Below are positions 4,616-64,000 of a stretch of 64,000 nucleotides of DNA, piece after piece. How positions within the stretch are numbered: the first letter of the stretch is position 1; each line of letters begins with the position of its first letter. This stretch comes from Paragordius varius (taxonomy: Eukaryota > Animalia > Nematomorpha). Location of the stretch: the NCBI GenBank assembly GCA_964247055.1, contig OZ176051.1, positions 9,424,001-9,488,000 on the forward strand, in the 5' to 3' direction. Position numbers and translations under genes: made by a program. The notes under the pieces are model-generated. The model was not told where the DNA came from. It made no database searches and saw only the letters and a list, made by a program, of their open reading frames with translations.

Positions 4616-7143
4616 ATGATTTTACTACCAATTTTATTCCTATTTGGGTTCTACAGTACATTAGCTCAGAAGCAACCAAATCCCGATGACATTTTGGTTT
4701 CATTTGGTCAGGAATATTATTATCAACTTCTTGATAAGTATCAAGGTCGAGCTAACATAACTGTCAATTTTGCGTTTGGTACATTTTACTACCCTAATGT
4801 TAATTATTCCCAATTTCTTGATCAAGAGATAGCGCCTAAATTGAATTTAGTTGATGGCCCTTATTCCATTTTAAAAAATGGTGTGACACAAAGGCGTGGA
4901 AAAATTTTTCTTCAAGGTAATAAATTTAATATTATAATACTCTTACATTGTGCAAGTGTTAATTTTTTACGTATGATTCATAGACGAAAGATGCATATAT
5001 TTTGTAATAACCGCCTTTCGCTAAATATCATGCAATAACAAACAATATATGTGTTATCCTTACACACTATGTTACGTTTTTTGCCCAATTTATCAATATC
5101 AATAAGTATTTTATATATTTTTTCTATATCTAACATTTTGCAATGTAATTTTTCAATTTTTAGTAACTACAGGGGGCATAGTATCACCAAATAATATCAA
5201 AAAGTATGAAATCGATATAGCTGAGTTTTGGCAACCTCTTAAAAATTCAAAAACACCCCCTACCATTCAAATAACTACCAAATATGGAAAAGAAATGCCT
5301 TTTCAAGTGTCAAACAAAACAAAATTAATATTTAATATACCTGGTAAATGTGATTATGTTGGACTTTGGACCATTAACATAGATGGTAAAGAACTTAACC
5401 TTTATTTTGAAATTTTCTACCCTTTGACGGATTACAAGAGCTACAATGGACGATTTATATTTGAGGAAAATTGTTCTGATTTGTTCAATGACCCAAATTT
5501 AGCCAAAACTTGTGAATTAAACCTTTATAGTCCTGGTAGAATTTATCAAAAATCACGGCTCTATTCAAGCTAATATAACAGCGATTCCTGATGAGTTTTT
5601 AGCCCTTTTCGTGAATAATTATGCATATAGAACATGGATAATTAAATTTGATGGTTTTTATTATTTATTTAAAATTTTTGGATATCATATATATATTTAT
5701 AATTAAATGTATAATTTTTCTGCCATCATTCTGAATCCTGGTAGGCGAAAGTGTTAATGTTTTCAAAATTATTTAGGCAATTCTCCTTTTTGTTATAAAC
5801 TAGAAAAATAACTTAAAACTATGTATTATTTATCCAGGAACGTGGGACAAAGCTGGAAACTTTAAATATATGCCCAAAAGTTTAAGTAAGTTTAATTATT
5901 AATTTTTTTATTACAATTATATATTATTCATATTTAACATCTTTTCCATTGCAAAAAAAACAAATATTCCGGTACATACCTATTAATCGTAAATATTAAA
6001 AAACATGAGCTGCAAACTTTTTGTCAAATTAATTCCATATTGGGTATTAGTGCTCTCAGAAAACTCTATTAACGTATATTAAAATCTGAGTTATATAAAT
6101 TTTTTTACTAAAATTATTAAAAATCTACAAACCTCACGTTATTATAGAATAATTAGGCTTAATTTAATATAATATGTTTAGCGAAAAGTGTTCGGAAATA
6201 CTATCAGTGTGAAAATACAGTTAGTTTCTCAACACTTGGATGGAATATAAAAGATGTTGAGTTTCTTGGCCCTTCTTATGAATACCTGACTAAATTTAAA
6301 ACTTACATGGACAATAATAAATTGATACTAAGTGGTTCGAGAAAAGAAATATCCAAATACGACAAAATATATCTAAAAAAATCGGATTCTCTACATGAAA
6401 TCAAATTGGTAGCTCAAGAGTGCCAAACTGCTTCCAAAAGTACTTATTTTTTTAAAAAATTCAAAGGAAATTAATGATATAATGCAACTTAACATGATTC
6501 CAACCCTTTAATATTAAAAAAATAATTTGCAAATAAAAATAAACGAAATTGTATTTTTACTTGATGTTCACTATAGGGAATAAATATACGCGATATGTCA
6601 CACAAAGTTTTATTATATTGTTAAATTATTTATTATTAGATAAAACATTATATAGATTATTTATAATTCTCAGCATGTATTTTATTTTCGGAAAATGTAG
6701 TTTGGGCATTAGTTAATACTTACTGGCGTAAAATTAAAATTTAACAAACAACTATATGTTAGCTGATTAGTGAAAACAACCATGCAAATACTCACACAAT
6801 GAGTTTTATTTGATTTTTAGTCATTGATGAATACGAGTATTATAACCATTCGCATAATTTGCCCGTAATATATAAACAAACCTCTTGTGTCAATGATATG
6901 CGTTTTTTACTAATGTGTAATATATTACCCTTTATCGATATATTAGATATCGGATGGAATAGTGAGGCAAGCACCTGGGACCAAATCAAGCCTCACCTGT
7001 CAAACCAATATTCCACAAGAATAACTTTGTATGCTAAATATCGGTCTCCGTATACAATCAAATGCAGAGCGAATTCTTGTATAAAGTTGCTTCTTTCGGC
7101 CGATGATCAAATCGCTTTTGTTAATAATCAATTAAACATCTAA
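4616..7143 (+). pseudogene. Gene X copy 1 (secreted Ig-like protein). Exons 4616-4916, 5164-5653, 5838-5885, 6182-6439, 6821-7143
   Basis: Signal peptide MILLPILFLFGFYSTLA and GT-AG phase-1 introns. Exon 2 is 490 nt versus 492/495 nt in other copies because of a 2-nt deletion near 5555 (caaaaatcacggc vs caaaaatccaacggc), a frameshift. Confidence 0.75.
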
Positions 7144-14460: not shown

Positions 14461-14585
14461 GTCCCTCATCAATTCAATCTAAGTGATGCGCCAGGTGAAA
14501 AGATAATTGCAAACGATTTTGGGGCAAGGGGGGCCAGTATTAAATCTTGCGGGGGACCCACAATTTATAGTTCGGCCATTGGTTT

Positions 14586-17285: not shown

Positions 17286-19806
17286 TTAGATGTTTTCTCT
17301 TATCATTAGTTTCAATTGATTATTAACTAGAGCGATTTGATCACCGGCCGAAAGACGCAACTTACAAGAATTCGCTCTACATTCGATTGTATACGGAGAC
17401 CGATTTTTAGCATACACAGTTATTCTTGTGGAATATTGGTTTGGTAAAAGGTGAAGCTTGATTTGGTCCCAGGTGCTTGCTTTATTATTCCATCTGATAT
17501 CTAATATATCGGTAAAGGGTAATATATTACACATTAGTAAAAAACGCATATCATTGACATAAGAGGTTTGTTTATAAACATATAGTATGGGCAAAATTTA
17601 TTCGAATGGTTATAATACTCGTATTCATCAATGACTAAAAATCAAAAACTCATTTACGATTGTGTGAGTGTATGCATGGCGATATTTGTTTTCACTAATC
17701 AGTTAACATACTGTTGTTTGTTAAATTTTAATTTTACGCCAGTAAGTATTAACTAATGCCCAAACTACATTTTCCGAAAATAAAATACATGCTATATATA
17801 ATTTTTTATCTAAATAATAAATAATTTAACAATATAATAAAACTTTGTGTGACATATCGCGTATATTTATTCCCTATAGTGAACATCAAGTAAAAATACA
17901 TTTTCGTTTATTTTTATTTGTAAATTATTTTTAATATTAAAGGGTTGATGTTAAGTTGCATTATATCATTAATTTCTTTTAATTTTTTTAAAAAAATAAG
18001 TACTTTTGGAAGCAGTTTGGCACTTTTGAGCTACCAATTTGATTTCATGTAGAGAATCCGATTTTTTTAGATATATTTTGTCGTATTTGGATATTTCTTT
18101 TCTCGAACCACTTAGTATCAACTTATTATTGTCCATATAGGTTTTAAATTTAGTCAGGTATTCATAAGAAGGGCCAAGAATCTCAACATCTTTTATATTC
18201 CATCCAAGTGTTGAGAAACTAACTGTATTTTCACACTGATAGTATTTCCGAACACTTTTCGCTAAACATATTATATTAAATTAAGCCTAATTATTCTATA
18301 ATAACGTGAGGTTTGCAGATTTTTAATAATTTTAGTAAAAAAATTTATATAACTCAGATTTAAATATACGTTAATAGAGTTTTCTGAGAGCACTAATACC
18401 CAATATGGAATTAATTTGACAAAAAGTTTGCAGCTCATGTTTTTTAATATTTACGATTAATAGGTATGTACCGGAATATTTGTTTTTTTTGCAATGGAAA
18501 AGATGTTAAATATTGAATAATATATAATTGTAAAAAAAAATTAATAATTAAACTTACTTAAACTTTTGGGCATATATTTAAAGTTTCCAGCTTTGTCCCA
18601 CGTTCCTGGATAAATAATACATAGTTTTAAGTTATTTTTCTAGTTTATAACAAAAAGGAGAATTGCTTAAAGAATTTTGAGAGCATTAACACACTCGCCT
18701 ACGAGCATTCAGAGTGATGATGGAAAAATTATACATTTAATTATAAATATATATGAAATGTAAAAATAAATAATGAAAACCATCAAATTTAATTATCCAT
18801 CTTCTATATGTATATTGATTCACGAAAAGGACTAAAAATTCATTATGAATCGCTGTTATATTAGCTTGAATAGAGCCGTTGGATATTTGATAAATTCTAC
18901 CAGGACTAAAAAGGTTTAATTCACAAGTTTTGGCTAAATTTGGGTCATTGAACAAATCAGAACAATTTTCCTCAAATATAAATCGTCCATTGTAGCTCTT
19001 GTAATCCGTCAAAGGGTAGAAAATTTCAAAATAAAGGTTAAGTTCTTTACCATCTATGTTAATGGTCCAAAGTCCAGCATAATCACATTTACCAGGTATA
19101 TTAATTATTAATTTTGTTTTGTTTGACACTTGAAAAGGCATTTCTTTTCCATATTTGGTAGTTATTTGAATGGTAGGGGGTGTTTTTGAATTTTTAAGAG
19201 GTTGCCAAAACTCAGCTATATCGATCTCATACTTTTTGATCTTATTTGGTGATACTATGCCCACTGTAATTACTAAAAATTGAAAAATTACTTTGCAAAA
19301 TATATATGGAAAATATATATAAAATATCTATTGATATTTAAATTGGGCAAAAAACGTAACTTAGTGTGTAAGGATAACACATTGTTTATTATGATATTTA
19401 GCGAAAGGCGGTTATTACAAAATATATGCATCTTTCGCCTATGAATCATACGTAAAAAATTAACACTTGCACAATGTAAGAGTATTATAATATTAAATTT
19501 ATTACCTTGAAGAGAAATATTTCCATGCCTTATTGTCACACCATTTTTCAAAACGGAATAAGGGCCATCAACTAAATTCAATTTAGGCGCTATCTCTTGA
19601 TCAAGAAATTGTGAATAATTAACATTAGGGTAGTAAAATGTTCCAAACGCAAAATTGACAGTTATGTTAGCTCGACCTTGATACTTATCAAGAAGTTGAT
19701 AATAATATTCTAGACCAAATGAAACCAAAATGTCATCGGGATTCGGTTGCTCCTGAGCTAATGTACTGTAGAACCCAAATAGGAAGAAAATTGGTAGTAA
19801 AATCAT
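17286..19806 (-). CDS. Gene X copy 2. Exons 19806-19506, 19272-18781, 18605-18558, 18261-18004, 17634-17286; possibly pseudogenised
   Basis: Exon lengths 301/492/48/258 keep phase 1 without stops. Exon 5 lacks one T in a homopolymer near 17597 compared with copies 3 and 4, which is either a real frameshift or an assembly error. Confidence 0.7.
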
Positions 19807-23285: not shown

Positions 23286-23289
23286 ACTT

Positions 23290-23946: not shown

Positions 23947-24129
23947 AATTAGGGTAATAAGAGTGATCACATATTAGAATACTTTTTAATCGCCGTGAAA
24001 TATTTTATTATATGATTAATTTTATTTTTTTGTCACTTATGTATTAATACGACCGTTTGTGATGCGCCTCTTAACACGTTAAATAATTTTACACTATTAA
24101 ACACTATAAAACAACAATTAAAATTTTTT

Positions 24130-37008: not shown

Positions 37009-39610
37009 TGGTGGCCAATCGAATTCCGAACGAAGCAAAAGTTGAGGCCTTACCTATTTCCGAACGAACATGACAACGCCAAGTGCCAATCTCGCTAATG
37101 ATAATATCAAGTTTGAGGAATACGTTGATTATATGACAAATGTTATGGAGGCGAAAAATATCCCTGTAACAGAACAAGCTCTTAAAACAACCTTACTTGC
37201 CTATGGTGGTCTATTGGTTGTAGGAACGACTGTATCCCAAAAAAATAAAAGATGTATCATGGAGTGAGATAATGACAACAGGCCTAAAAGTATTTAATCC
37301 CACAAAATCAAAATTTCAAATCAGATTTGAATTTTTTCGACTTGTGCGGAGCAACGCTAAATCTTTCACCCAATTTTTAGAACGGATTAAGATCGCAGCC
37401 GAAGAGTCCAAATTCAATGATTCGATTGAGGAACGTATTCGGGATGCTTTCGTCATTGGTTTACGGCAACCTCAATTGGAAACGATATACATTCAAGGTA
37501 TCCAGATGCCGAGATCAACGGACAACCAGTGCCTCTAGAAACGATAGTGGATCTCGCACTAGCACACGAGGCTGCTAGGGCTGGCCTTCATAACTATAAT
37601 GATAATACTATAACAATGGTAAAAATTTAAATCGATAACACGCCAATAATAATAAAGGCCATGGGTTCACGACAGCCTACAGACCCCTACATTCGTACAA
37701 TCGTTGTGGGAGTAGCCATGGACCAAACAAATGTCCTGCCTGGAACCGTAATTGGAATAAATGTTGAAACCACTTCGCTAAAATGTGTACAAAAAACGCT
37801 GCCAAGAGTATGTTCAACCGCTAGATCCATATAAAAGAAATGCCAACACGGGGACGCAGAATGTTGTCTATTGAAAGAAAAAATGCCAAAGGCACCGCTC
37901 ATTTGTGGCTTGGTTTGGATCACGAGATTCAACATCGACATCTCTAAAGTACGAATTAACTTTCTTAAACTTGATAAAATTATTGAAAATTTTCCTAATG
38001 TATTTAAAGAGAAATTAGGCTGTTACATTGAGCCGGTTAAATTTATATAACATCCAATGCCTCCCTCAAGGTTTGGCCTTTTCGCCGAGTACCGTTTCCC
38101 CTAAGAGCAAAAGTTGAGAACGAATTGCTAAGATTACAAAAATTAGACATTTTGGAACCAATAAATCCCGACCTCACACCTCTTACATGGGCCACGCCCA
38201 CCGTCAATGTGCTAAAAGCGAATGGAGAGGTAAGAATTTGTATGGATTTTAGAGTTACGATCAACAAATGGCTGACGGAGGACTCACATATCATTCCAAC
38301 GTTTGATGGTTTAGTAAGTAAGATTGGCGAAGGCCAAGTTTTCACTAAGATTGATCTGAAAGATGCCTATCTACAAATGCCCACAACTAAAGAATCACAA
38401 CACCTCCTAACAATTCCAAGGCACAAGGGTTTTTCCGCTACAAAAGGATGCCTTTCGGACTGTCAAAAGTACCAATAATTTTTCAACGAGTCATGGACCA
38501 GGGTTTATAAGATTGTCCCGGCACTTGTGCATATTTAGATGATGTTTTAGTAACTGGCAAATCTGAACATGCACATTTAATAAATCTTAATGTATTAAAT
38601 GGGTTAGAATTAGGAGGTTTTAAATTAAGAAAAGATAAAATTGGTAAACTTTCTTTAAATTATCTGGGATTTTAAATAAGTAATAAAGGTATAAATCCTT
38701 GCAAGAAGAAAGTAAAAGCAATCAATGATTTTAAAAAACCTGTGGATAAAAATCTTTAATAAGTTTTTTAGGATTTTTGACGTTTCATGAAAGATTTATA
38801 CCCAAGCTTCAATTAATTGGTGATGTACATAGTTTAACAAGTAAGAACCTCAGATGGAACGGTCGGAAAAACATGAGAAAAGTGGAAAGCAGCGAAGGAA
38901 TTATTAAGTGAACAATTATTTTTAACACCATACAATCCGGATAGAAAGTTAGTAATTGAAACCGATGCATCAGACATAGGGTTTGGATGTATTTTAAGTC
39001 CTGTAGTAAATGGTGAAAGAAAACCCATTGCCTATGGTTGAAGAAATTGTAGTACCCCAGATGTGAACTACTTCACGATAGTAAGGAAATTAAAGGCTTT
39101 TGTTTTTGTATTAGAAGAGTTTCATAACTTCGTTTATGGTAGTAGGTTTGAAACTTTGACAGAGTACCACTGGTTATGTTGAAAAATAGGGATAGAAATT
39201 TGAAAGAAATTCAGAATGCGAAAGTTTTAAGATGGGGTAACCGACTGAATGATTATGTTGAATCAAGTTATCAGGCGGATCCGAAAATAGAGCCGATTAC
39301 TTGTCAAGATGCCCCGGGGAAGATAATGTTGAAACAACTGATAGGGATTACATGGTAACGAGACATCTTAGGTTCCTAAATTGTCATAATATTCATTTAA
39401 GTCGAGATGAGATCTGGAGAGAGACAGTAAAGGATAAATTGCAAAAGGTTATCAAGGCTATTCATAATCAAGATTGGAGTGATGTTGAGTTGGCTGGGTT
39501 TACAAACCGGAAAGGAGATTCGTACCAATACGGATTGCTAAGTTTGAACGATATCGATCATCCCTCGGTTGCTTTGTATCTCAAATCAGTCATTTCTTTG
39601 GCTAAAGCCT
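37009..39610 (+). mobile_element. Ty3/Gypsy (Mag-like) retrotransposon 5' part: PBS, gag, protease, RT, RNase H; decayed
   Basis: tggtggcc PBS after ...ACA; gag FEEYVDYM; DTGTQ protease; WATPTVNVLKANGEVRICMDFR, KIDLKDAYLQ, YLDDVLV; ETDASDIGFG. Interrupted by the Tc1/mariner block. Confidence 0.9.
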
Positions 39611-41810: not shown

Positions 41811-42928
41811 GTAATAATTTATGAATAGCTAAAAACTTTGAGATAATGGACATCGAAATGATAAATGCGATTAAAATTCTGGAAAAAAAGTAATTATTTC
41901 TTGCAATTTGCGGGAAAATAGCATTTTTATCGCACATTAACTTGAATAAAATATTAACCAATAGAGGGAAACTCAATTATAATTATGTATATGTATCATA
42001 AGCCTAATCCTAAACTTCAAAATTTGAATATAGAACGAGATGAAGATTAAATTTTGTAACCAAACAGGTTGGTTCGAACCCAACGGAACATGTTCTTGCT
42101 AATTTCGATGCTATTTAAATAAATTTTCTAATCGAACAACTTCCCAAACTATTGGTAAATGAAATAGCCTAGTAATGAATAATGCTAATATAAATTATTG
42201 ATTGTATTCACAAAAGCTTACAACATTGGTACTCAACAACAAAAGATAAAGGGACGAAAAAAAATTATCTTGTCGCAAGGGCCAAGTAACCATGTAATCC
42301 GATAAAAATTTCAGAGATCTTTGACACATTTGCAGATATTTATACTTAAAATAAACATTTCAAAATATATTAAATTATTTAAGGGAAAAAGATCCCTTAG
42401 GGTCATAGTAGGAGTACCACTAATAAAATGATTTCAATAATCCTAACCTAATATACAAAAATCATATTTAAAAAAGGGCTTTTACGTACGGCAGAACCCT
42501 GAAAATGAAACCGATAATACTCTCGCTTTAATAAATATTTCAGCTCAAAACATAAAATAGATAAAAAATTTTAGGAAAAATTTAGACAACACCTAAAAAT
42601 ATATTCTAAAAGTTAAATATTTTATCGACTTTGTTATTTAATTATTTTTGAAATATTAAAATTATGAATTTATTTGATAAATCCAAAAACTTTCGCGGGC
42701 CGCAAATTATTGCAGAAGGCCGCGTGTAGGACAGTGCTGGTGGATGAATGGACAATAAAAATCGAGATATTAGTGTTGGTTTGGTATGAAGCTTTAATTA
42801 CTTCTTTAAATCAACGTTTTACTTATTCAAAGTTGTGGGCCCAAATAAGAATTAATTGCCTAAAATGTTTAATATTTATTTGTGAGAGATAGTTAATTTT
42901 TGTAAATCATCACACAACGAAAAAAGTA

Positions 42929-45488
42929 TTAGATGTTTTCTCTTATTTTTAGTTTCAATTGATTATTAACTAGAGCGATTTGATCACCGGCCGAAAGACG
43001 CAACTTACAAGAATTCGCTCTACATTCGATTGTATAGGGAGGCCGATTTTTAGCATACACAGTTATTCTTGTGGAATATTGGTTTGGTAACAGGTGAGGC
43101 TTGATTTGGTCCCAGGTGCTTGCTTTATTATTCCATCTGATATCTAATATATCGATAAAGGGTAATATATTACACATTAGTAAAAAACGAATATCATTGA
43201 CATAAGAGGTTTGTTTAACATTTATTATGGGCAAAATTTTATGCGAATGGTTATAATACTCGTATTCATCAATGACTAAAAATCAAATAAAACTCATTTA
43301 CGATTGTGTGAGTGTATGCATGGCGATATTTGCTTTCACTAATCAGTTAACATACTGTTGTTTGTTAAATTTTAATTTTACGCCAGTAAGTATTAACTAA
43401 TGCCCAAACTACATTTTCCTAAAATAAAATACATGCTGAGAATTATAAACTATCTATATATTTTTTAGGTAAATAATAAATAATTTAACAATATAATAAA
43501 ACTTTGTGTGACATATCGCGTATATATTCCCTATAGTGAACATCAAGTAAAAATACATTTTCGTTTATTTTTATTTGTAAATTATTTTTTTAATATTAAA
43601 GGGTTGGTATCATGTTAATTGCATTATATCATTAATTTCTTTTAATTTTTTAAAAAAATAAGTACTTTTGGAAGCAGTTTGGCACTCCTGAGCTACCAAT
43701 TTAATTTCATGTAGAGAATCCGATTTTTTTAGATATATTTTGTCGTATTTGGATATTTCTTTTCTCGAACCACTTAGTATCAACTTATTATTGTCCATGT
43801 AGGTTTTAAATTTAGTCAGGTATTCATAAGAAGGGCCAAGAATCTCAACATCTTTTATATTCCATCCAAGTGTTGAGAAACTAACTGTATTTTCACACTG
43901 ATAGTATTTCCGAACACTTTTCGCTAAACATATTATATTAAATTAAGCCTAATTATTCTATAATAACGTGAGGTTTTTAGATTTTTAATAATTTTAGTAA
44001 AAAAATTTATATAACTCAGATTTTAATATACGTTAATAAAGTTTTGTGAGAGCACTAATACCCAATATGAATTAATTTGACAAAAAGTTTGCAGCTCATT
44101 TTTTTTAATCTTTACGATTATTAGGTATGTATCGGAATATTTGTTTTTTTTGCAATGGAAAAGATGTTAAATATGAATAATATATAAGTAATAAAAAAAT
44201 TAATAATTAAACTTACTTAAACTTTTGGGCATATATTTAAAGTTTCCAGCTTTGTCCCACGTTCCTGGATAAATAATACATAGTTTTAAGTTATTTTTCT
44301 AGTTTATAACAAAAAGGAGAATTGCCTAAATTTTGAGAGCATTAACACACTGGTCTACCAGGATTCACAGTGATGATGGAAAAATTGTACACTTAATTAT
44401 AAATATATATGACATGTAAAAATTTTAAATAAATAATAAAAACCATCAAATTTAGTTTTCCATCTTCTATATACAAAATTATTCACGAAAAGGGCTAAAA
44501 ACTCATCAGGAATCGCTGTTATATTAGCTTGAATAGAGCCGTTGGATATTTGATTTATTCTATAAAAACTATGAAGGTTTAATTCACATGTTTTTGCTAA
44601 ATTTGGGTCATTGAACAAATCGGAACAATCTTCCTCAAATATAAATCGTCCATTGTAGCTCTTGTAATCCGTCAAAGGGTAGAAAATTGTTGCAAGAAAT
44701 CTAATTTCTTTACCATCTACGTTAATGGTCCAATATCCAGCATAATCACATTTACCAGGTATATTAAAAATTAATTTTGTTTTGTTTGACACCTGAAAGG
44801 GCACTTTTTTTCCAAATTTGGTAGTTATTTGAATGGTAGGGGGTGTTTTTGAATTTTTAAGAGGTTGCCAAAACTCATGTATATCGAATTCACACTTTTT
44901 GATCTTATTTGGTGATACATCTATGCCTCCTGTAGTTACTATAAATCGAGAAATTACATTGCAAAATATTAGATATAGAAAAAAAATATAAAATATCTAT
45001 TGATATTTAAATTGGGCAAAAACCGTAACATAGTGTGTAAGGATAACACATATATTGTTATATTGTTATTCAATGATATTTAGCGAAAAGCGGTTATTAC
45101 AAAATATATGCATCTTTCGCCTATGAATCATACGTAAAAAATTAACACTTGCACATTGTAAGAGTATTATAATATTAAATTTATTACCTTCAAGAGAAAT
45201 ATTTCCATGCTTTATTGTTACACCATTTTTCAAAACGGAATAAGGGCCATCAACTAAATTCAATTTAGGCGCTATCTCTTGATCAAGAAATTGGGAATAA
45301 TTAACATTAGGGTAGGAAAATGTTCCAAACGCAAAATTGACAGTTATGTTAGCTCGACCTTGATACTCATCAAGAAGTTGATAATAATATTCTTGACCAA
45401 ATGAAACCCAAATATCATTAGGACTTGGTTGCTCCTGAGCTAATGTACTGTAGAACCCAAATAGGAAAAAAATTGGTAGTAAAATCAT
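42929..45488 (-). CDS. Gene X copy 3, apparently intact (about 482 aa secreted Ig-like glycoprotein). Exons 45488-45188, 44938-44444, 44264-44217, 43923-43666, 43275-42929
   Basis: Exon lengths 301+495+48+258+347=1449 nt, all introns phase 1 GT-AG, no stops seen. Indels relative to other copies are in frame. Has a signal peptide, several N-x-S/T sites, and a C..W..Y-x-x-x-C Ig-like pattern in exon 5. Confidence 0.8.
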
Positions 45489-45927
45489 TTCAAAAAATTT
45501 AATAGCTTTGATATAATTATTGGAGGTCTTATATAGAAATGCTTTAAAATAAAATGGGCCCTACATATTAAAGGAGATAAAGCAAATATTATTGAAATTT
45601 GGCAATGTATAATGATATTGCAGGCTACTAAATAAATATTTTTTAATTTTCTTTGGACCAAAAGCCTAATTTTTATGTATTTCGACAAAAACATTATGTA
45701 AAACTCGTGTCTAATACATTAGTTTTGTAAAATGTCAATATTTGCAATAAACCAAAACAACTTTACTGACAGTTATTACGGTAAAAAAATAAATTAAAGT
45801 GTATTTGATCTGGCTAAGCTTACAATCTCAAATCTGGTTTAAACACGATCGCCAATTTTAAATTATATAACTCAAAATTTGTATTATAGTTAATTTATTA
45901 TATATAAAAAAGGAATTAACTGTATAA

Positions 45928-47035
45928 CACTAGACAACAAATTTTAACTTTTTTTAACTGCCATTCTTGTAAATTTAAAATTTATTTCATTAAAGTACAT
46001 AATTAGTATATCTGAAAAGAAAATTGGTCTAGCATGGAAGAATTTCTTTATATTAGAGTTTATCGATAATTTTTGGCCCCGATTTAAGATAAACTCGAAA
46101 TTTCGAAAATTAAAAGTTTTAGATATGAAGCCATGTATTTTATATCATTCGAAAGAGCGCAAAAAACTGCATCTTTTAAATGGTAGTAAGTCATTTAAAT
46201 CAATCGGATGTAAAAGTTATTTGGATTTAAATGGTCGAAATTTTCAATCCTTAAATAAGTCAATAATTTTTACATACAAACTAATTTGAAAATCATATAA
46301 ATTATTTTAATATAATTATTAGGGTTATATTAGTATTTAATTTAAAAAAAATGTTTGAAAAAGCTTTTGGTTCGCTTTTTTAATAAAAATTATTATTATC
46401 ATAAAATTTTACCTAGTGGATACTAAAATGCATAGTTATAACTGTAAATATTACATAATGGCTATAAAAGATCAAAACTTTGTTTTCTTTAAAATTTTGA
46501 AATTATCAGCCTTGTAAAGAAAATTAATTAATATTGATGAGATGGTAATTTTTAAAAAACAAAAAACTTAAATATGGCTGTTTTGAGTGACATAAAAGCA
46601 ATAATAAAATGTTTTAATCAAAAACACTTTCTTGTGTTATCTTTTTTGGACATTCATCACCAGCTAAACAAAGTTTGAGCTATTTTCATCCATTGGTTTT
46701 AAAAATATAATAATTAAAAAAAATGCTCTCGCTTCGCGCGTTTGTCGCTCTTTGTGTCCAATATTAACTGTCGATGTAATACATATTAGTATGCATTTTA
46801 TAGAGTTTTTATTACTCTTTCGAATGATATATTACAAATGGGCATTACTAGTATATTTTCAAAGAAAAATATTTTTTAGTAAAATTTTGATAAAGAGGGC
46901 GCATAATCAAAAAAATCAAATTATACAAAATTCTTCCAACGAGTTATAATTTTTATTTCAGATTTACTGTTAAAATGATACTAAATATCAGAAAATTCTA
47001 AAAACTCGAGTGGCAGAAAAATTTGTTGTCCAGTG
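45928..47035. mobile_element. Non-autonomous CACT-ended DNA transposon with TAA TSD (CMC/Chapaev3-like)
   Basis: TIRs cactagacaacaaatttt / cactggacaacaaatttt with taa on both sides. Empty site seen near 20215-20225 and in copy 1. Confidence 0.85.
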
Positions 47036-47342
47036 TAATTTAAGTGATTCTAAGAACATGAAACGGAATCTTATAGAAGGTTCACCACAAAATAATAAAT
47101 TTTGCGAAAAGAAAATATAGAGTTACACTGGTAGATTTTCATTAAATAATGCCAACAACTATATCTTTATTTTTATTATATACCAATAAAATGCCAAAAA
47201 TTTACCTATATGTCGTATTAATTAATAGCTTTTAACAAATATTTTAAATAACCTACTTAAAAAAGTTTTGAGCCAACCCACAATTTAGTTACAATTTGGA
47301 ATGTTTTCAACTTTAAGCGATTATAATTTAAGAAATTAGGAA

Positions 47343-47389
<47 letters not shown>

Positions 47390-47854
47390 CGGCATATTAC
47401 CTGATGATGAACATGAGCATATATAAATCAATAAAAATCCCATTTTAAGTCTAAATAGATTTATACCATTTAGTCCAATTCAATACTTTTCTAACTAAAC
47501 GCATATTTTATCAAGTAAATGCATCATCCTAACTTCCAAACGCAACATTATTTGTAGTTAAAAATTTTATTTTAGACCTGAAATTCAGCTAACCATATTA
47601 AATCTAAAAGAATTCGTAATATAATTTGTTATAAAATAAAAAATTGTCTTTAAATGCAAAAATAATGTTGCGAAATGAAAAACTTGTCTTGCTTGAAAAA
47701 TTTTATGGATAAAAATTGTGGCGGGAGCTATGTTGTGTTATGACATTGTTGATTTTTACCTAATAGTTAACCTTGTAATTATTTAATTTTGATGATAATG
47801 ATTACATATTCTTTTTTCTTAAATGTAAACTATAGAATGTGATTTTTTAAAATA

Positions 47855-48408
47855 CTAGCGTAAATCTCGTGCTGCTACGCGGGCTATTTGAAAAAAGGGA
47901 CAATAAAATGATCCACATATGTGGATTATTTCGAAACATTATTTAATAGCTATGATCTCATAGGAATTTTAAAACAGCATTCATACTAATATATATTTAC
48001 TTGGGCGAAAAATAAAAAATGATTTTTGTGGACTTAATTTTTTTGAAAAAAATGGCATTTTACGGGGGAGCGGGTAAGAAGTTGGCCTAAATTAAAAAAA
48101 CCGAGCCGACTATGTTCGGCGCAATCGAAAATAAGTAAACAAAAATCATATTTGAAATTGATCCAACACGTTCTCCGGAAAATTGTCTCAAAGACACAAT
48201 TTTTGTGGACTTCTCTTTTCAAAAAAAACCGTTTTTTAGACGGGGTGGGCCCGAACTGGGGGTCTAATATAAAAAAAGGCCATGCTATTGTTAGGGCATT
48301 CATTATGATTATATTTTCGATATTTGGATTTGAATGGGTGTACCGGTTTTCTGGAAAAAGATCACAAAGCCAGCATTTATTTATATATATATATAATATA
48401 TATATATA
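47855..48408 (-). mobile_element. Helitron, same insertion as 21032-21584
   Basis: Same 3' hairpin plus CTAG at the same flanking site. The 5' end is obscured by a TA expansion. Confidence 0.85.
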
Positions 48409-49141
48409 TTCGATACTGTGCCAAAAATAAACATATCTTTCTTTTATGGGATATTGATTAAAAATAAAATTGAATCGTTATCATTTTTAAAGGCAAACGA
48501 TATATTAATATCATTCTTTTATAATTTTCTCTAACTTAATTTTATTGCTATTTTTTGTGTCATAAGACTCACAATAAGCGTTAGCCTAAATATAAACTGG
48601 CTTATCGCTTTGCATTCAAGGGTAATAATCCTGTAAGTGTCGCGTCAATGATTTAGCCTTTAATGTCGGTATTTTAATTCGCATATGCTCAAACAGTTAT
48701 GATTCAAATTGCCAACAGACAGTACTAATCTCATTTTTGTTTATTGTAAAAAAATTCTAAATACCGATTCGTGATATCAATTTAATTTTTTTTAGATTTT
48801 ATGCCAAAAAGCAAGACAATTTTTTATGCTACTTTTATAAAAGAGATCAATAATAAAAAACGATATATATAACGCCGCCCTCTAGTACCTTGCACAAAAA
48901 GTCTGGGGATTTTTTAAGAACACACATTTTGTTCCCTTAACCACTCATATGCAACATCAAACTTTAATTTCCAGTGTAATAACTTTACATTTTAACTTAA
49001 GTTAAAAAAAATAAATTTATCCATTTGCAATATAACAATATTTTACCTATTATTTCATCTTATACTTACGATATACCAATATTGAAGGCCAAATAACTTA
49101 ATTACAATAAAAACATTAACACATTTTTCATTCTATAATAT

Positions 49142-50900
49142 TGATGATGTTGGATATCTCTTAGTTTATGTACAAACTCTGGGGCAGTTGAGACGATTCG
49201 ACCATATTGTAAGATATCTGTGCAAGTTCTTGGATTAAATGTGGTGTTATATTTTTAATCTAATCTAAATATCGTAGCTTAAGCCTTCCAAGTTTCCTAG
49301 CCCCTTCAACTGGGCCTAAGATGGTCGCTTTTTCTAAGTTATCGGCTCTCATCACATGTCCGTAAACTCTGTGCTGAAAGGCATGAATTTTTTGAGGAAG
49401 GTTAGTTTGGGTTTAATATGTACTAATATTTTATATTGTATCTTATGCTCCCATTCTATACCAATATATCTATAGGTCCATAACTCAAACGCTTTTATTT
49501 TCTTGTAAATGACTTACAGCTTTGGTGCATTACTGGAAAACATATTGATCTATTACACGCTTTTTGATGGAATTGGGAATTTTTTTGGAGAATGGATTTA
49601 AGTATAATTATTGAATTTTCTGCCATTGCAGCTCTCCTGGTACTGCTGGTTGTAGAGGTGCCACTTATTAAATAGTAGATCTGAGGTAAATTAAGTAGTT
49701 CTGAATGTTTTGTTCTTAAAATTCACAGTAAGTCCTCTTCTGGGATAAGAATTGTTGCGTCATCAGCGAAACGCAAGTTATTGATTGTCTCGCCTTCTAT
49801 TATGATGCCTGCTGAGTCATTTCTATTATTTTTGTGATGTCAGTAAGTTAAATAGCGAAGGTGATAGTGTACATCCTTGTCTGACCCTTATTTGTCTATT
49901 TATTGTTTGGCTGGGGCTTGTTGAAACTCGTAAAACTGCTTTTTCATTTGAAGATTGTTAAGATTTAATTGTGCAGGAATCCGCTTCACCCATAGTTTTT
50001 CATAGACCACCCTATCAAAGCCTTGGAGTAGTTCAGGAAGGAAAATATTTTTGTTGTATACATTTGCTTGTTCTATGATGCGTTTTATTAGAGATGTGGT
50101 CTCGACAACTTTGAGTCGGAAACCAGCCTGTATTAGATATGAAGTTACTGTACCAATTCTGTATGCTCATTTGGATTATTTGAAAAGTATTATGTATTTG
50201 TGAGGTATGATAATTCTGTAATGATCGCAATCTTTTACTTGACATTTTCATGTATATTGGTATGAAGATTGATTTAGTCCAGTCTTTTAGCCATCTACAA
50301 TTTCTTTTGGCCTAACTTGGTTATTATGTCAGTTGTTTTAAGACTTCTTTTGAAATGCCGCCATCCTGGGGTTCTGTTCTTAACGATTAGCAATTCCGTA
50401 TCAATATCTGTTTGAGTTATGCTGGGTTCTGTTAAATGTGAAATAATTTGTGTTGTATTTGTTTTAAAATTTGCTTCAATGTATTCTTCCCATCTTGTTA
50501 CATCTTGTTAGTTAGCTGATTCCTTCAATGTGATTTATTTGTGATTTTTTGGGTTTATAATGTATTCATATAGGGAAATGATCCTTTAGACAATTCGTTT
50601 CCCTTTTGAGGCAAATATTTAATGCCTGTAAATGTAGTAATTTTATTTGTTTTTGAATATGCAATTGAGTGTTTTATATTTGTAAGAGTTTGAGCGTTGT
50701 TTGGCCAATTTTTCTTTTTCTGCAATCAAACACAGTGGGCTTAGTTGTTTTTTTTTCAGATTTTGTTTTAAGTTGTTCTTTGCAATTTGTACTATAATTT
50801 TTTTAGTTTCCTATTAGTTTACACGTATATTTGTATGTATCATGCAAAGTCATAAATTATCCTTAATTTTTATTTGTGTTATTTGATCTCATGTAAATTA
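49142..50900 (-). mobile_element. Decayed RTE-clade LINE (longer version of 22322-23285)
   Basis: Same RT motifs, plus upstream AGFR and IPK regions that are missing from the other copy. Confidence 0.85.
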
Positions 50901-51179
50901 CCTTCATAGAAAATTGTATATATCTAACCCGATTTTTCTAATAAATGTATTATCATTATCTTATACTATCACTATGATCTAACTTAACAAACAGTTACCA
51001 CATCACTGTGGGTATTAGTTAACATTTATTCACAAAAAATATATTGAATTGTACATTGACATCATTTTCTTTTACGAAAATAATAAAGCATTAGGCAGCA
51101 AATGTTAGGGGTTTTCAGCTATTGTTGAGACAGCGGAGATTGTTTATTGGATATAATATTACATAAACATATAAATTTA

Positions 51180-51694
51180 TTTTAATTTAGATCGTGTTTG
51201 ACCAGATTTGTTTTGTAAGTTTAGCCACGAAAAATAATATTTATTTAGTATTTCCGTTGGTTACAGTTCGAACAAGTTGTTTTCGTTTAAGGGAAAAATT
51301 GGAATTTTTTCACCAAATTTAGACCCGAAATATTTTTGTCAACCTAGATATATAGAAAATTTAAGCTTTGGTCCATTATTTAATAATATATTTTTAGTAG
51401 GTTACCAAATTTAATAATTATTTATCTCAACTGTATATTTAATTTTTGAATGCTCTAACCTTCCACTTACTCCTACAGAATATGTTATTGAATTCAGCAA
51501 AATTTTAAGATATATAGACATAATGCCAAGAAAGAAAGATTAAATAGAAACTCAGTAGCTAAGATAACTGTCAATTTTGCTTATGAAAATTTCTTACGAT
51601 AATATACAATTTTTTCAAAAGGTAATTAACCAAATAATACCTGTAGTAATTACTATCAGAAGTTATATAATTTGATTGCAACTATGTACTAGGG
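51180..51694 (+). pseudogene. Second copy of the old gene X paralog (longer upstream region retained)
   Basis: gatcgtgtttgaccagatttg matches gene X upstream gatcgtgtttaaaccagatttg (about 4256). The AKITVNFAY motif is present. Confidence 0.7.
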
Positions 51695-52389
51695 CAGGGG
51701 TGAAACACAAATAGCTTCGCGGACGGCATGCGTGCATCAAAGATTTGACGGGCCTAATAAAATATATAGGCATTAATAAAGTTTATTGAATTTAAAACAT
51801 AAGAGTGCACAAATCACTGTTTATTTTAACAATTTTAGCTAGATCATGCCAAATTTTTATTTTTTCAGAATCACTTATGCTTATATCTCAGGAAATGTAA
51901 TTGAAATTTCTGGCGAACTCCATAAAAATTTTGAAGGGACATGCCACCTTGTTAGATATTTCTGAATTAGGGTAATAATAGTGATCACATATTAGACTAC
52001 TATTAAATCGCGGTGAAATATTTTATTATATGATTAATTTTATTTTTTTGTTACTTATGTATTAATACGACCGTTTGTGATGCGCCTCTTACACATAAAT
52101 TTACACTATTAAACACTATAAAACAATAATTAAATATTTTTTTTAAATCAAAATATGTTGCCCAATAATTCTTTAGTATTTCCAACAATTAAACATATAT
52201 TTTCCACAATGCCCAATAACCTTTTAGTGTTTCTAACAATCAAACATATATTTTCAACAATGAAATAATTTTACCAACAATCGAATTATTTTGCCCAATT
52301 TTAGTGTTTCCAATAATTAAACATTTTTACAAAAATCAAATAATTTCTCCAACAATCTAAATTTTTTGCCCAGTAAAATTATGGTGTTG

Positions 52390-53950
52390 CGAGTGATAAA
52401 AATTAAAATTTAACAAAAAATGTTTTTTAACTTGTAAAATTATTGGTATAAAAAAATAACATTCATCGTAGATAAATATTTCATAAAATCTTCTGGTTCG
52501 GAAAGACTGTGTATACAAGCAATTCCGATCATAATCTATATATTTATAAAAATGGAAAATGCTGGCTTTGTGATCTGTTTCCGGAAAACCGGTAGACTCA
52601 TTAAAATCCAAGCGTCAAAAATATTTAATCATTAATGAATGCCCCACCCTAAAACGGGTTTTTTTGAAAACACAAGTCCAGAAAAATCGTGTCTTTGAGA
52701 CATATTCTGGAAAACGTGTTGGAATATTCGATTTCAAATATAATTATTTTAACTTTTCGATTGCTTCGAAACTACTCGGCTTACTTTTTTAATTTAGGCT
52801 CTCTTTTTACCCGTTCCCCCAGTAAAATGCCATTTTTTCAAAAAAACTAAATAATTTTTTGCCCAGGGCATGAGACCGTTAAAATTCACTGAGGATTCGA
52901 GTTATTCTCTGTCAAAAGGAAAAAATTTAGTCTTGTGTTTTATTAATATTGGCTGCTGGGTAAACAGATAGCCGCTAAAACTGCGCCACTATATAGAAAT
53001 TGCGTTGTTTTGGAGCTAATTTACAAAAAATTTATGAAGCCATATGAGCTTATTAAAAGCTAATATTACTCGTAGCTAGGTAAAAATTAAGGTTGGGTTA
53101 TTTTATTAGCCGTTAATAGGGGGCCTTTATGCCCTAAAATGCCATCATATAACGATTATTTAGTGTTGAGGTATTTTTTCGAATAACCCATGAGACGATG
53201 GTATCAAAGATGATTCCGAATATTCGCCCTATAAAGGCAAATGGGTAGGGGTCTATCGGTTTAAAACTGATACGCCACACAAAACAGGCGTAGTTTTGGA
53301 GATAATTTTCACAAAACTTAAGAAGCTTCACGAGAGTTAAACGCATTTTTGGAAAATTTGTATAATATCATTTTTTCCTTTAAAAAGGGACCACAAATGA
53401 TTTACTTTTTATATCCCTTGATCCCAGCTCTATCACAATTTCAAAGAACTTTTAACTGTGACTTCGTATAAGACAAATCTTAAAATAAATCCATTGATAG
53501 CTGAATATTCAATAAGGGACAGATTTAATATGGTCAATTTGAAGTAAACAATATTTCAGCCTATGGAAAATCCCTTAAAAGAATAATTGAAGACATTCTT
53601 TTTATTAAATATGTTTATTATTATTATTTTATCTCCATTAACTCTATTTTTTGCAAATTATTAAGAATAATTATCGGTGAGACGACGCCACACCGAAGCG
53701 TGACAGGGACAGCTAGTATCTCGTATAAATTTACTATGAATCAGAAAATGTTAAAGAAATTTATAAAAAATGTAGATATCTTTTTCTCAATCTCTCGAAA
53801 ATCCTGATAAATATTATCAACAAAATTTCTAAGTGTTATTTCGAACAATCTATTATTTTTCTTTTTTTATTTGTCGGGTTCGTTAACAAACTCGCAATCA
53901 TAAATGGGGTCGGGAACGTCGAAAGTTGAAGAAGGCATGATGTAATCATT
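52390..53950 (-). mobile_element. Degenerate piggyBac-like transposase with a Helitron 5' fragment (52535-about 52865, +) inserted
   Basis: VVPF(K)GK..IQ..PK..KLLKFCE-NY..Y resembles the piggyBac MVPFKGR..QY.P.KP.KFGIK motif; an upstream FF.IF..IV..T.Y pattern is present. The Helitron starts A|TCTATATATTTATAAAAATGG. Confidence 0.6.
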
Positions 53951-62106: not shown

Positions 62107-64000
62107 TTAGATGTTTTCTCTTATCATTAGTTTCAATTGATTATTAACTAGAGCGATTTGATCACCGGCCGAAAGACGCAACTTACAAGAATTCGCTCTA
62201 CATTCGATTGTATACGGAGACCGATTTTTAGCATACACAGTTATTCTTGTGGAATATTGGTTTGGTAAAAGGTGAGGCTTGATTTGGTCCCAGGTGCTTG
62301 CTTTATTATTCCATCTGATATCTAATATATCGGTAAAGGGTAATATATTACACATTAGTAAAAAACGAATATCATTGACATAAGAGGTTTGTTTATAAAC
62401 ATTTATTATGGGCAAAATTTTATGCGAATGGTTATAATACTCGTATTCATCAATGACTAAAAATCAAATAAAACTCATTTACGATTGTGTTGTATGCATG
62501 GCGATATTTGCTTTCACTAATCAGTTAACATACTGTTGTTTGTTAAATTTTAATTTTACGCCAGTAAGTATTAACTAATGCCCAAACTACATTTTCCGAA
62601 AATAAAATACATGCTGAGAATTATAAACTATCTATATAATTTTTAGGTAAATAATAAATAATTCACAATATAATAAAACTTTGTGTGACATATCGCGTAT
62701 ATATTCCCTATAGTGAACAAGTAAAAATACATTTTCGTTTATTTTTATTTGTAAATTATTTTTTTAATATTAAAGGGTTGGTATCATGTTAAGTTGCATT
62801 ATATCATTAATTTCTTTTAATTTTTTTAAAAAATAAGTACTTTTGGAGGCAGTTTGGCACTCCTTAGCTACCAATTTAATTTCATGTAGAGAATCCGATT
62901 TTTTTAGATATATTTTGTCGTATTTGGATATTTCGTTTCTCGAACCACTTAGTATCAACTTATTATTGTCCATGTAGGTTTTAAATTTAGTCAGGTATTC
63001 ATAAGAAGGGCCAAGAATCTCAACATCTTTTATATTCCATCCAAGTGTTGAGAAACTAACTGTATTTTCACACTGATAGTATTTCCGAACACTTTTCGCT
63101 AATATATATTATATTAAATTAAGCCTAATTATTCTATAATAACGTGAGGTTTGTAGATTTTGAATTATTTTAGTAAAAAAATTTATATAACTCAGATTTT
63201 AATATACGTTAATAGAGTTTTCTGAGAGCACTAATACCCAATATGGAATTAACTTGACAAAAAGTTTGCAGCTCATGTTTTTTAATCTTTACGATTAATA
63301 GGTATGTACCGGAATATTTGTATTTATTTTGCATTGGAAAAGATTATAAATGATATATAATTGTAATAAAAAATTAATAATTAAACTTACTTAAACTTTT
63401 GGGCATATATTTAAAGTTTCCAGCTTTGTCCCACGTTCCTATAATACATAGTTTTAAGTTATTTTAGTTTATAACAAAAAGGAGAATTGCTTAAAGAATA
63501 TTGAGAGCATTAACACACTCGCCTTCGAGCATTCAGAGTGATGATGGAAAAATTATACATTTAATTATAAATATATATGAAATGTAAAAAAAATAAAGAA
63601 AACCATCAAATTTAATTATCCATCTTCTATATGCATATTGATTCACGAAAAGGACTAAAAATTCATTAGGAATCGCTGTTATATTAGCTTGAATAGAGCC
63701 GTTGGATTTTTGATATATTCTACAATGACTATAAAGGTTTAATTCACAAGTTTTGGCTAAATTAGGGTCATTGAACAAATCAGAACAATTTTCCTCAAAT
63801 ATAAATCGTCCATTGTAGCTCTTGTAATCCGTCAAAGGGTAGAAAATTTCAAAATAAAGGTTAAGTTCTTTACCATCTATGTTAATGGTCCAAAGTCCAG
63901 CATAATCACATTTACCAGGTATATTAAAGATTAATTTTGTTTTGTTTGACACTTGAAAAGGCATTTCTTTTCCATATTTGGTAGTTATTTGAATGGTAGG
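62107..64000 (-). CDS. Gene X copy 4, 5' part beyond the window. Exon 2 (partial, to about 63605), exons 63438-63391, 63098-62841, 62456-62107
   Basis: Exon lengths 48/258/350 in phase, no stops seen. Confidence 0.75.

What the first reader, a model, noticed from the sequence alone, without database searches (positions are those of the whole stretch)
42929..45488. Unrecognised, recently amplified family of secreted Ig-like proteins (gene X)
Seen: a five-exon gene of about 482 aa reconstructed in four copies, with a signal peptide, every intron in phase 1, constant exon lengths (301/492-495/48/258), and indels in multiples of 3 apart from two lesions. Several N-glycosylation sequons are present. 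Exon 5 has a Cys..Trp..Tyr-x-x-x-Cys pattern (CNILPFIDILDIRW..YTIECRANS); exons 2 and 4 have weaker versions (KLIFNIPGKCDYAGLW; CENTVSFSTLGW). Established: phase 1-1 exons are typical of shuffled extracellular modules such as Ig and FN3. Inference: a lineage-specific Ig-superfamily-like secreted protein under birth-and-death amplification, as seen in allorecognition, immune or parasite host-interaction gene clusters. I do not recognise it as any known family.
Basis: partly seen in the sequence, partly recalled or inferred. Interest (0 to 1): 0.8.

Follow-up and report, generated by a model that had tools for sequence, protein, structure and literature searches.

The report
Orphan secreted Ig-like protein family
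This AT-rich animal genome holds about 32 copies of a gene for a secreted, sugar-coated protein made of antibody-like folds, with no detectable sequence relatives elsewhere; the youngest copies sit in a cluster where they duplicate, swap pieces and decay.

Summary
The gene is real. It lies on the minus strand at 42929-45488 and has five GT-AG exons, all introns in phase 1. Four copies lie in the window.

Exon 5 is drawn 132 nt too long. In 19 of 19 paralogs an AG acceptor sits just before the conserved start of exon 5 (window 43143). The extra stretch carries frameshifts, a stop or a lost acceptor in 5 of 11 close copies.

The family is old. It has about 32 loci on 7 contigs, down to 26% identity, with a young cluster of 10 copies at C2:9.36-9.53 Mb.

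No sequence relatives were found in Pfam, PDB sequences, 1.84 billion representative proteins or metagenome contigs.

AlphaFold2 models of exon 2 (pLDDT 92) and exon 4 (pLDDT 91) are Ig-like beta-sandwiches: two domains in exon 2 and one in exon 4.

Copy C is a recombinant of two neighbouring copies. Four of the 11 young copies are broken. One 30-codon patch of exon 2 changes faster than the flanking introns.

Function is unknown. The best reading is an extracellular binding protein. The spliced protein was not searched or folded whole.

The parts
45188..45488 (-). Exon 1 of copy C (301 nt). It carries the ATG, a hydrophobic signal-type segment and an N-terminal beta-rich module with three N-x-S/T sequons.
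   Evidence: The length is 301 nt in all 11 close copies.
45435..45488 (-). Predicted signal peptide, residues 1-18, ending in the conserved L-A-Q.
   Evidence: Kyte-Doolittle maximum 2.04 at residues 2-16. The segment is conserved across paralogs. No signal-peptide predictor was available.
44444..44938 (-). Exon 2 (495 nt, 164 full codons). It is predicted to form two tandem Ig-like beta-sandwich domains, with an invariant Cys104-Cys117 pair.
   Evidence: AF2 pLDDT 92.2, pTM 0.82. Foldseek gives E about 1e-6 to 1e-4 to Ig tandems. VIA-align gives Z 8.4, rmsd 2.1 A over 77 residues to a titin Ig domain.
44667..44756 (-). Fast-evolving patch: exon-2 codons 61-90, the predicted F and G strands of the first Ig-like domain.
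   Evidence: There are about 11-13 nonsynonymous versus about 0.6 synonymous differences per lineage pair. Between copies C and B the patch differs at 14/90 sites versus 23/381 in the flanking introns (p=0.004, window chosen post hoc).
44217..44264 (-). Exon 3, a 48-nt micro-exon (linker).
   Evidence: Divergence is 1.1% versus 5-7% in the flanking introns. Homologous 51-63-nt micro-exons with good splice sites occur in distant paralogs.
43666..43923 (-). Exon 4 (258 nt, 85 full codons): one predicted Ig-like domain. It is the most conserved module, with invariant Cys9, Trp20 and Cys80.
   Evidence: AF2 pLDDT 91.3. Foldseek TMq is up to 0.68 to CD4, titin and obscurin Ig domains. VIA gives Z 7.7. 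dN/dS is 0.19.
43144..43275 (-). It is most likely the 3' end of intron 4.
   Evidence: Five of 11 close copies carry a frameshift, a stop or a lost upstream AG here. Homology to distant paralogs starts downstream of it. A TACTAAT-like branch motif lies about 30 nt before the downstream AG in all 11 copies.
42929..43143 (-). Exon 5 as revised (215 nt including TAA). It is a C-terminal beta-rich module with two invariant Trp and an invariant Cys-x4-Cys.
   Evidence: An AG sits directly before this start in 19 of 19 paralogs. An AATAAA lies 51 nt after the stop.
4616..7140 (+). Copy A, inverted relative to the others and broken (5-nt deficit in exon 2, 18-nt deficit in exon 5).
17286..19806 (-). 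Copy B. It is intact under the revised model; its only frameshift lies in the probable intron stretch.
62107..64000 (-). Copy D. It runs off the window end inside exon 2; the full copy (L024) is intact.
41813..52376 (.). Duplicated unit around copy C (roughly 8-10 kb). Counterparts lie at 14582-24354 (B), 59418-64000 (D) and, inverted, 3366-7875 (A).
   Evidence: Self-comparison of the window.

Best explanation
Gene X belongs to a lineage-restricted family of about 32 loci. By sequence it is an orphan. It encodes a soluble, secreted, N-glycosylated protein of about 438 aa built as a chain of small beta-sandwich modules. Exon 2 encodes two Ig-like domains and exon 4 encodes one. Exons 1 and 5 look like further beta-rich modules but were not folded.

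Shown here: the gene model, coding constraint, family size, absence of detectable sequence relatives, predicted Ig-like folds, tandem amplification of a unit of about 10 kb in a transposon-rich region, DNA exchange between copies, and decay of some copies.

Inferred: the protein works outside the cell as a binding or recognition molecule. The edge (F-G) strands of its first exon-2 Ig-like domain would be part of a contact surface that is changing fast in the young cluster, as expected if the partner co-evolves. The partner could be a host molecule, a pathogen or a mate. Earlier notes of this scan suggest the genome is a horsehair worm's. I did not verify this; if it is true, a host-facing role is the most attractive guess.
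For: Gene model and copies.

Exon-5 acceptor: the AG is present in 19 of 19 paralogs, and the extension carries lesions in 5 of 11 copies.

Coding constraint:
- E1, E3 and E4 show no length change in 10 copies (one exception, in a pseudogene), whereas every intron varies in length.
- Older paralog pairs have dN/dS of 0.1-0.6.
- Within the cluster, E4 has dN/dS 0.19 and the revised E5 0.41.

Family size: 31-37 matches per exon on contigs C2, C3, C5, C7, C8, C10 and C11, down to 26% identity.

Secretion: the only hydrophobic segment is N-terminal. Sequons and paired cysteines are conserved.

Fold:
- E2 has pLDDT 92.2. Foldseek gives E 9e-7 and weaker to IL-18R, titin and NCAM tandems. VIA gives Z 8.4, rmsd 2.1 A over 77 residues, and two-domain alignments to PD-L2 and VCAM-1.
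- E4 has pLDDT 91.3, and its top 50 hits are nearly all Ig domains.

No sequence relatives:
- Pfam and PDB sequences gave nothing.
- The E2 profile searched against 1.84e9 representatives gave only two weak hits to bacterial repeat proteins, and hhalign probability was 0.9% for the one compared (P0001).
- The E4 and E1 profiles found nothing in the word search, and the metagenome scan found nothing.

Dynamics:
- The amplicon was mapped.
- Copy C is at least 98.5% identical to copy L023 over 45600-44218, then 99-100% identical to L021/D over about 43650-42858.
- Four of 11 copies are broken.
- The fast patch is described.
Against: - No RNA evidence for any junction was obtainable.
- The spliced protein was not folded or searched whole, so the folds of exons 1 and 5 and the inter-domain packing are unknown.
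- Structural Z scores of 7.7-8.4 lie in the range the tool calls common for beta-sandwiches. No Pfam Ig model is hit.
- The fast patch was picked after looking. It is significant in only one of three lineage pairs, and nonsynonymous versus synonymous within the patch alone is not significant (p=0.17).
- dN/dS of 0.68-0.91 in exons 1-2 of the cluster also fits relaxed constraint.
- Absence of relatives is weakened by poor database cover of this lineage. A transposon reverse transcriptase from the window also found nothing at E<=1e-10 in the word search.
Confidence: 0.7

Rival explanations
1. The first reader's 482-aa model is right, at least for the copies where the long exon 5 is open. The upstream acceptor at 43276/43275 is used and the extra 44 codons are coding.
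For: The extension is open in copies C, D, L021, L022, A and L026. Its divergence (3.7%) is lower than that of most introns. Forty-six open codons upstream of the downstream acceptor are unusual in DNA this AT-rich.
Against: - The extension carries a 1-nt deletion in B and L027, a 5-nt deletion in L001 and a 2-nt deletion in L025. L023 has a stop plus AG-to-AA loss of the upstream acceptor. B, L001 and L023 are otherwise intact.
- All 19 paralogs keep an AG at the downstream site, and most close the frame within 3-25 codons upstream.
- The long model gives an odd number of cysteines. The short one gives eight in copy C.
Confidence: 0.1
2. The young cluster copies are functionally redundant duplicates drifting towards pseudogenes. 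The high amino-acid divergence in exons 1-2 reflects relaxed constraint, not selection for diversity.
For: dN/dS is 0.68 for E1 and 0.91 for E2. Exon divergence is about equal to intron divergence. Four of 11 copies are already broken.
Against: - Seven copies keep 438-codon frames with no indel in E1, E3 or E4, while every intron has indels.
- Within E2, codons 21-60 and 91-120 have pN/pS of 0.16-0.33, next to a patch with a ratio above 4.
- In C versus B that patch exceeds the divergence of its own flanking introns.
Confidence: 0.15
3. The proteins are structural parts of the animal's own extracellular matrix, cuticle or egg envelope rather than recognition molecules. The copy number would serve dosage.
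For: They are secreted, glycosylated, multi-module beta-sandwich proteins with conserved disulfides. Older subfamilies are under plain purifying selection.
Against: There are no repeats, low-complexity regions or cross-linking motifs typical of matrix proteins in the exon translations. Localised fast amino-acid change on one strand pair is not expected for a dosage-driven structural protein. Neither point is decisive.
Confidence: 0.2
4. Gene X is cargo or a gene of a mobile element, and its spread reflects transposition.
For: Copies are dispersed on seven contigs. The cluster is full of retroelement remnants.
Against: - No exon matches any transposon protein family.
- The copies keep introns, so they are not retrocopies.
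- Neighbouring copies share 8-10 kb of collinear flank, as in segmental duplication.
- The retroelement ORFs lie between units, not inside the gene.
Confidence: 0.03

Closest known systems
Immunoglobulin-superfamily I-set domains (titin, NCAM, telokin, obscurin)
   Same: The predicted fold is shared. E2 residues 1-87 align at Z 8.4, rmsd 2.1 A over 77 residues, and E4 at Z 7.7. Exon 4 is a one-domain exon bounded by phase-1 introns. A D-x-G/A-x-Y stretch lies before the predicted F strand of the first E2 domain; I read this from alignment A1, and calling it a 'tyrosine corner' rests on my own knowledge.
   Different: No Pfam Ig model is hit even at E<=1 in 38 exon translations. The F-strand Cys is absent. 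The B-strand Cys of E2 exists only in the youngest subfamily. The invariant cysteines sit in loops or at module ends. Two domains share one exon.
Hydractinia Alr family (PMC9546547): 41 'unusual IgSF' genes in one genomic complex
   Same: Both are a large clustered family with pseudogenes. In both, the Ig folds are seen through structure prediction, while diagnostic sequence motifs are missing. Both have invariant cysteine pairs and are highly diverse.
   Different: According to that paper's abstract, Alr proteins are transmembrane cell-surface proteins with ITAM/ITIM tails, and sensitive homology searches link them to the IgSF. Gene X has no TM segment or tail, and no sequence link to any IgSF protein was found. 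The two families share no detectable homology.
Diversified secreted invertebrate Ig proteins: snail FREPs and insect hemolin (reviewed in PMC11999971)
   Same: All are soluble secreted proteins with tandem Ig-type domains. According to the review, FREPs diversify by point mutation and recombination between family members, which is comparable with the mosaic copy C.
   Different: FREPs carry a C-terminal fibrinogen domain, and hemolin is a single gene with canonical Ig domains. Gene X has neither.
Lineage-specific secreted modular families of parasitic helminths, for example the atypical CCP-domain TGM and HpARI families of Heligmosomoides (from my own knowledge, not checked here)
   Same: All are secreted chains of small disulfide-bonded modules with roughly one module per exon. 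They are sequence-divergent versions of a common extracellular fold and have expanded in a single lineage.
   Different: The fold differs (CCP/sushi versus Ig-like). Those families have demonstrated host ligands; gene X has none. That this genome belongs to a parasite is not verified here.

Membership tests
Immunoglobulin superfamily (Ig-like domain, Pfam clan Ig) | Greek-key beta-sandwich of about 7-9 strands in about 80-100 residues | tested here: met
   AF2 models of E2 (two domains, pLDDT 92.2) and E4 (pLDDT 91.3) were built. The top Foldseek and VIA-align matches are almost exclusively Ig domains. This rests on prediction only.
Immunoglobulin superfamily (Ig-like domain, Pfam clan Ig) | Significant match to a sequence profile of an Ig family (I-set, V-set, ig, Ig_2/3) | tested here: not met
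   No Ig model was hit at E<=10 for copy C or at E<=1 for 20 E2 and 18 E4 paralogs. PDB profile searches were also empty.
Immunoglobulin superfamily (Ig-like domain, Pfam clan Ig) | Canonical B-strand Cys, C-strand Trp and F-strand Y-x-C disulfide core | tested here: inconclusive
   In E4, Cys9, Trp20 and Cys80 are invariant, but DSSP puts them outside the B, C and F strands. In E2, the F-strand position holds Thr or Ile, and Cys15/Cys63 occur only in the close subfamily.
Immunoglobulin superfamily (Ig-like domain, Pfam clan Ig) | Domain exons bounded by phase-1 introns | tested here: met
   All four introns are phase 1. Exon 4 holds one domain and exon 2 holds two.
Hydractinia Alr-type cell-surface IgSF | Single-pass transmembrane segment and cytoplasmic tail with ITAM/ITIM | tested here: not met
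   No hydrophobic window reaches 1.3 (Kyte-Doolittle, 15 residues) after the signal segment, and the C-terminus is polar.
Fibrinogen-related proteins (FREPs) | C-terminal fibrinogen domain | tested here: not met
   Pfam scans of the exon 4 and exon 5 translations found nothing.
Fibronectin type III | Match to an FN3 profile | tested here: not met
   The only hit is Tor_FN3_1st at E 0.08-0.11 (12.8 bits against a cut-off of 25) in 4 of 20 E2 paralogs. The two weak library hits to bacterial FN3/Ig-repeat proteins gave an hhalign probability of 0.9% for the one compared (P0001; P0002 was not compared).
Transposon-encoded protein | Match to reverse transcriptase, integrase, transposase or a similar protein | tested here: not met
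   No exon has such a match. The RT and integrase ORFs of the window lie between the gene copies.

The most novel reading that the evidence does not exclude
Suppose the genome is indeed a horsehair worm's. The family could then be a phylum- or genus-specific repertoire of secreted Ig-like effectors that the parasite releases into its insect host. The repertoire would be diversified by tandem duplication, exchange between copies and positive selection on one binding face. That would make it a first concrete molecular candidate for hairworm immune evasion or host manipulation.
Probability: 0.15. Interest if true: 0.7.

Novelty: new variant of a known kind. Interest (0 to 1): 0.38.

Why it matters
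Families of secreted Ig-like proteins that duplicate and diversify underlie recognition systems in many animals. This one is invisible to sequence-based annotation and shows up only through structure prediction, like the Hydractinia Alr genes. Standard pipelines would label it 'hypothetical' or miss it. It gives a defined set of about 32 loci, a corrected gene model and a candidate contact surface, all testable by expression profiling, secretome proteomics and binding assays. If the host genome is a parasite's, it is a reasonable candidate for host interaction. If not, it is one more lineage-specific extracellular family, of modest interest on its own.

Tried and rejected
- Pfam on every exon and on all paralog exons gave nothing above noise.
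- ESM Atlas on E2 and on mature E1 gave no usable hit.
- PDB sequence profiles for E1, E2 and E4 gave only chance-level hits.
- A profile-profile comparison of E4 against E2 showed no detectable internal repeat relationship.
- The two library hits of the E2 profile (P0001, P0002) are bacterial multi-repeat proteins, one a subtilase with many Ig/FN3-type repeats. I rejected them as relatives; hhalign probability was 0.9% for P0001, the only one compared.
- The metagenome contig scan with the E4 profile found 226 pattern matches, none confirmed.
- I tried to establish the organism myself. HSP70 and enolase loci are split into exons too short for the length window of the word search. The 'horsehair worm' label therefore comes only from earlier notes of this scan.
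- The idea that the divergent E2 patch was imported by conversion from a distant paralog is unlikely. Its synonymous divergence is very low while its nonsynonymous divergence is high.
- The transposon-cargo idea was rejected (see rival explanations).
Full report
**The observation**

The stretch 42929-45488 carries a minus-strand gene. Translation of the three minus frames and anchor searches give these exons:

| Exon | Window coordinates | Length (nt) |
|---|---|---|
| E1 | 45488-45188 | 301 |
| E2 | 44938-44444 | 495 |
| E3 | 44264-44217 | 48 |
| E4 | 43923-43666 | 258 |

There is also a last exon ending at the TAA at 42929-42931. Every junction is AG/GT and every intron is in phase 1. A tblastn search with the five exon translations finds four copies in the window:
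- Copy A lies on the plus strand at 4616-7140.
- Copy B lies on the minus strand at 17286-19806.
- Copy C is this one.
- Copy D lies on the minus strand from 62107 and runs off the window end. The complete copy was fetched as L024.

**Exon 5 is drawn too long**

- In protein alignments of 19 family members, homology in the last exon begins at a conserved D-I-x-W. Nucleotide homology to distant paralogs starts at window position ~43150.
- The 'invariant Asp' is the acceptor itself. In 19 of 19 paralogs an AG sits directly before AT-AT[TC]-nnn-TGG. In most of them the frame closes within 3-25 codons upstream.
B and L027 have a 1-nt deletion, L001 a 5-nt deletion and L025 a 2-nt deletion. L023 has a stop codon plus loss of the upstream AG.
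- E1, E3 and E4 of the same copies carry no indel, apart from one in a pseudogene.
- A TACTAAT-like motif about 30 nt upstream of the downstream AG is present in all 11 copies.

I therefore place exon 5 at 43143-42929. The coding sequence is then 1317 nt, or 438 aa. Under this model copies C, B, D, L021, L022, L023 and L001 are intact. The broken copies are A (E2 short by 5 nt, E5 by 18 nt), L025 (several lesions), L026 (one stop in E2) and L027 (E2 short by 5 nt). In that script the exon columns were concatenated only to count length modulo 3 and stops. No joined sequence was printed, saved or searched.

One consequence follows.

**A real, constrained, old family**

Searches of the window's own genome (110.6 Mb, 44 contigs) with E2, E5 and an E4 profile each find 31-37 matches. 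They correspond to about 32 loci on contigs C2, C3, C5, C7, C8, C10 and C11, at 26-100% identity. Twenty paralogs that I fetched keep the same exon order. Paralogs at about 45% identity have a homologous micro-exon of 51-63 nt.

Pairs of older paralogs have dN/dS of about 0.1-0.6 in most exons. The family is therefore not just 'recently amplified'. What is recent is a cluster of 10 copies at C2:9.36-9.53 Mb, plus one copy at 12.87 Mb. These are 89-97% identical over gene and introns.

**Protein features**

The only strongly hydrophobic segment is the N-terminal one (Kyte-Doolittle 2.04). No later window exceeds 1.27, and the C-terminus is polar. This fits a soluble secreted protein; no signal-peptide predictor was available.

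Copy C has six N-x-S/T sequons and eight cysteines. Three cysteine pairs are invariant across the family, one pair within each of E2, E4 and E5.

**No sequence relatives**

- Pfam finds nothing for copy C, nor for 20 E2 and 18 E4 paralogs.
- PDB sequence profiles and the ESM Atlas give nothing.
- An HMMER profile of E2 against 1.84 billion representative proteins returns two weak hits to bacterial repeat proteins. Profile-profile comparison of P0001, the only one compared, does not support them.
- Word-index searches with the E4 and E1 profiles, and a metagenome contig scan, are empty.

There is a caveat. The word searches see only proteins of 0.55 to 1.75 times the exon length. A reverse-transcriptase ORF from this window also found nothing at E<=1e-10, so cover of this lineage in the library looks thin. 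The E2 HMMER scan is the only strong negative.

**Fold**

As the scan's rules require, the spliced protein was neither searched nor folded whole. Exons were handled one at a time by reference.

With the paralog alignment, AlphaFold2 gives E2 a mean pLDDT of 92.2 and pTM of 0.82. The model is all-beta.
- Foldseek matches tandem Ig structures (IL-18 receptor, titin, NCAM) at E 9e-7 to 1e-4.
- VIA-align puts residues 1-87 on titin and NCAM I-set domains at Z 8.4, rmsd 2.1 A over 77 residues.
- VIA-align also aligns the whole model to two-domain structures such as PD-L2 and VCAM-1.

E4 gives pLDDT 91.3. Its best matches are again almost all Ig domains, with Foldseek TMq up to 0.68 and VIA Z 7.7.

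These Z values lie in the range the tool warns is common for beta-sandwiches. I conclude 'Ig-like fold', not proven IgSF ancestry.

**Dynamics of the young cluster**

The duplicated unit is about 8-10 kb with the gene in the middle. Retroelement remnants lie between units.

Copy C is a mosaic:
- From 45600 to about 44218 it is at least 98.5% identical to L023.
- From about 43650 to 42858 it is 99-100% identical to L021 and D, while L023 drops to 91-97%.

This shows crossing-over or gene conversion between copies. It agrees with another note on this window (s1-326807).

Exon divergence within the cluster is about as high as intron divergence, except in E3 and E4. dN/dS by exon is as follows:

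| Exon | dN/dS |
|---|---|
| E1 | 0.68 |
| E2 | 0.91 |
| E3 | 0.39 |
| E4 | 0.19 |
| E5 (revised) | 0.41 |

E2 is heterogeneous. Codons 21-60 and 91-120 have pN/pS of 0.16-0.33. Codons 61-90 are the predicted F and G strands of the first Ig-like domain. They have about 11-13 nonsynonymous against about 0.6 synonymous differences per lineage pair.

Between C and B this patch differs at 14 of 90 sites, against 23 of 381 in the two flanking introns (p=0.004). The window was chosen after looking. The other two lineage pairs are not significant, and nonsynonymous versus synonymous within the patch gives p=0.17. I regard diversifying selection as suggested, not shown.

**Interpretation**

The best-supported reading is a lineage-restricted, sequence-orphan family of secreted glycoproteins built from Ig-like modules. 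It evolves by tandem duplication, exchange between copies and loss of copies. The most likely job is extracellular binding, with the F-G edge of one module as part of a changing contact surface.

Earlier notes of this scan call the genome a probable horsehair worm. I could not verify this. Published hairworm genomes are reported at 200-300 Mb (bioRxiv 10.1101/2024.06.11.598342), whereas this assembly is 110.6 Mb. A host-interaction role is therefore a guess, at about 15%.

**Comparison with known families**

The closest analogue in kind is the Hydractinia Alr family. It is also a clustered family whose Ig folds lack the diagnostic sequence motifs and were recognised with structure prediction (PMC9546547). 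Alr proteins are transmembrane, however. Snail FREPs and insect hemolin (PMC11999971) share the secreted tandem-Ig theme but have canonical domains.

**Not done**

Noticed in passing
window 24224-25153 and 52118-52411: Arrays of a repeat unit of about 80 nt, 60-77% alike, lie at the upstream edge of the duplicated units of copies B and C. They may mark the amplicon boundary or a recombination-prone satellite.
   Followed up: no
window 13629-14354 (-), 25947-26312 (-), 38125-38478 (+): Retroelement remnants lie between the gene copies: a reverse-transcriptase ORF (RVT_1, E 6e-32), a weak integrase core and a weak second RT. The first found no relative at E<=1e-10 in the word-index protein search, which suggests thin database cover of this lineage.
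   Followed up: partly
L003 (G000:C10:90000-95500): This locus has two exon-1 copies about 3.3 kb apart but only one exon 2, and no exon 4 or 5 in the fetched stretch. It looks like a partial tandem duplication or a truncated family member.
   Followed up: no
G000:C5:12314213-12316595 (-) and 12331024-12333385 (+); C7:7869081-7871223, 7904130-7906273, 7929576-7931305; C8:1634680-1636553 and 1642085-1644283: Older family members also sit in small local groups: an inverted pair on C5, a trio on C7 and a tandem pair on C8. Local duplication has therefore recurred throughout the family's history.
   Followed up: partly
paralog loci L007-L015, between exons 2 and 4: The linker micro-exon varies in length among subfamilies (48, 51, 60, 63 nt) while keeping phase 1-1 and good splice sites. 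It would be easy for gene finders to miss.
   Followed up: partly
window 43150-43190 and the same place in 10 other copies: A TACTAAT-like motif about 30 nt upstream of the exon-5 acceptor is conserved in all 11 close copies. It is a possible branch site and may help in defining this genome's splice signals.
   Followed up: no
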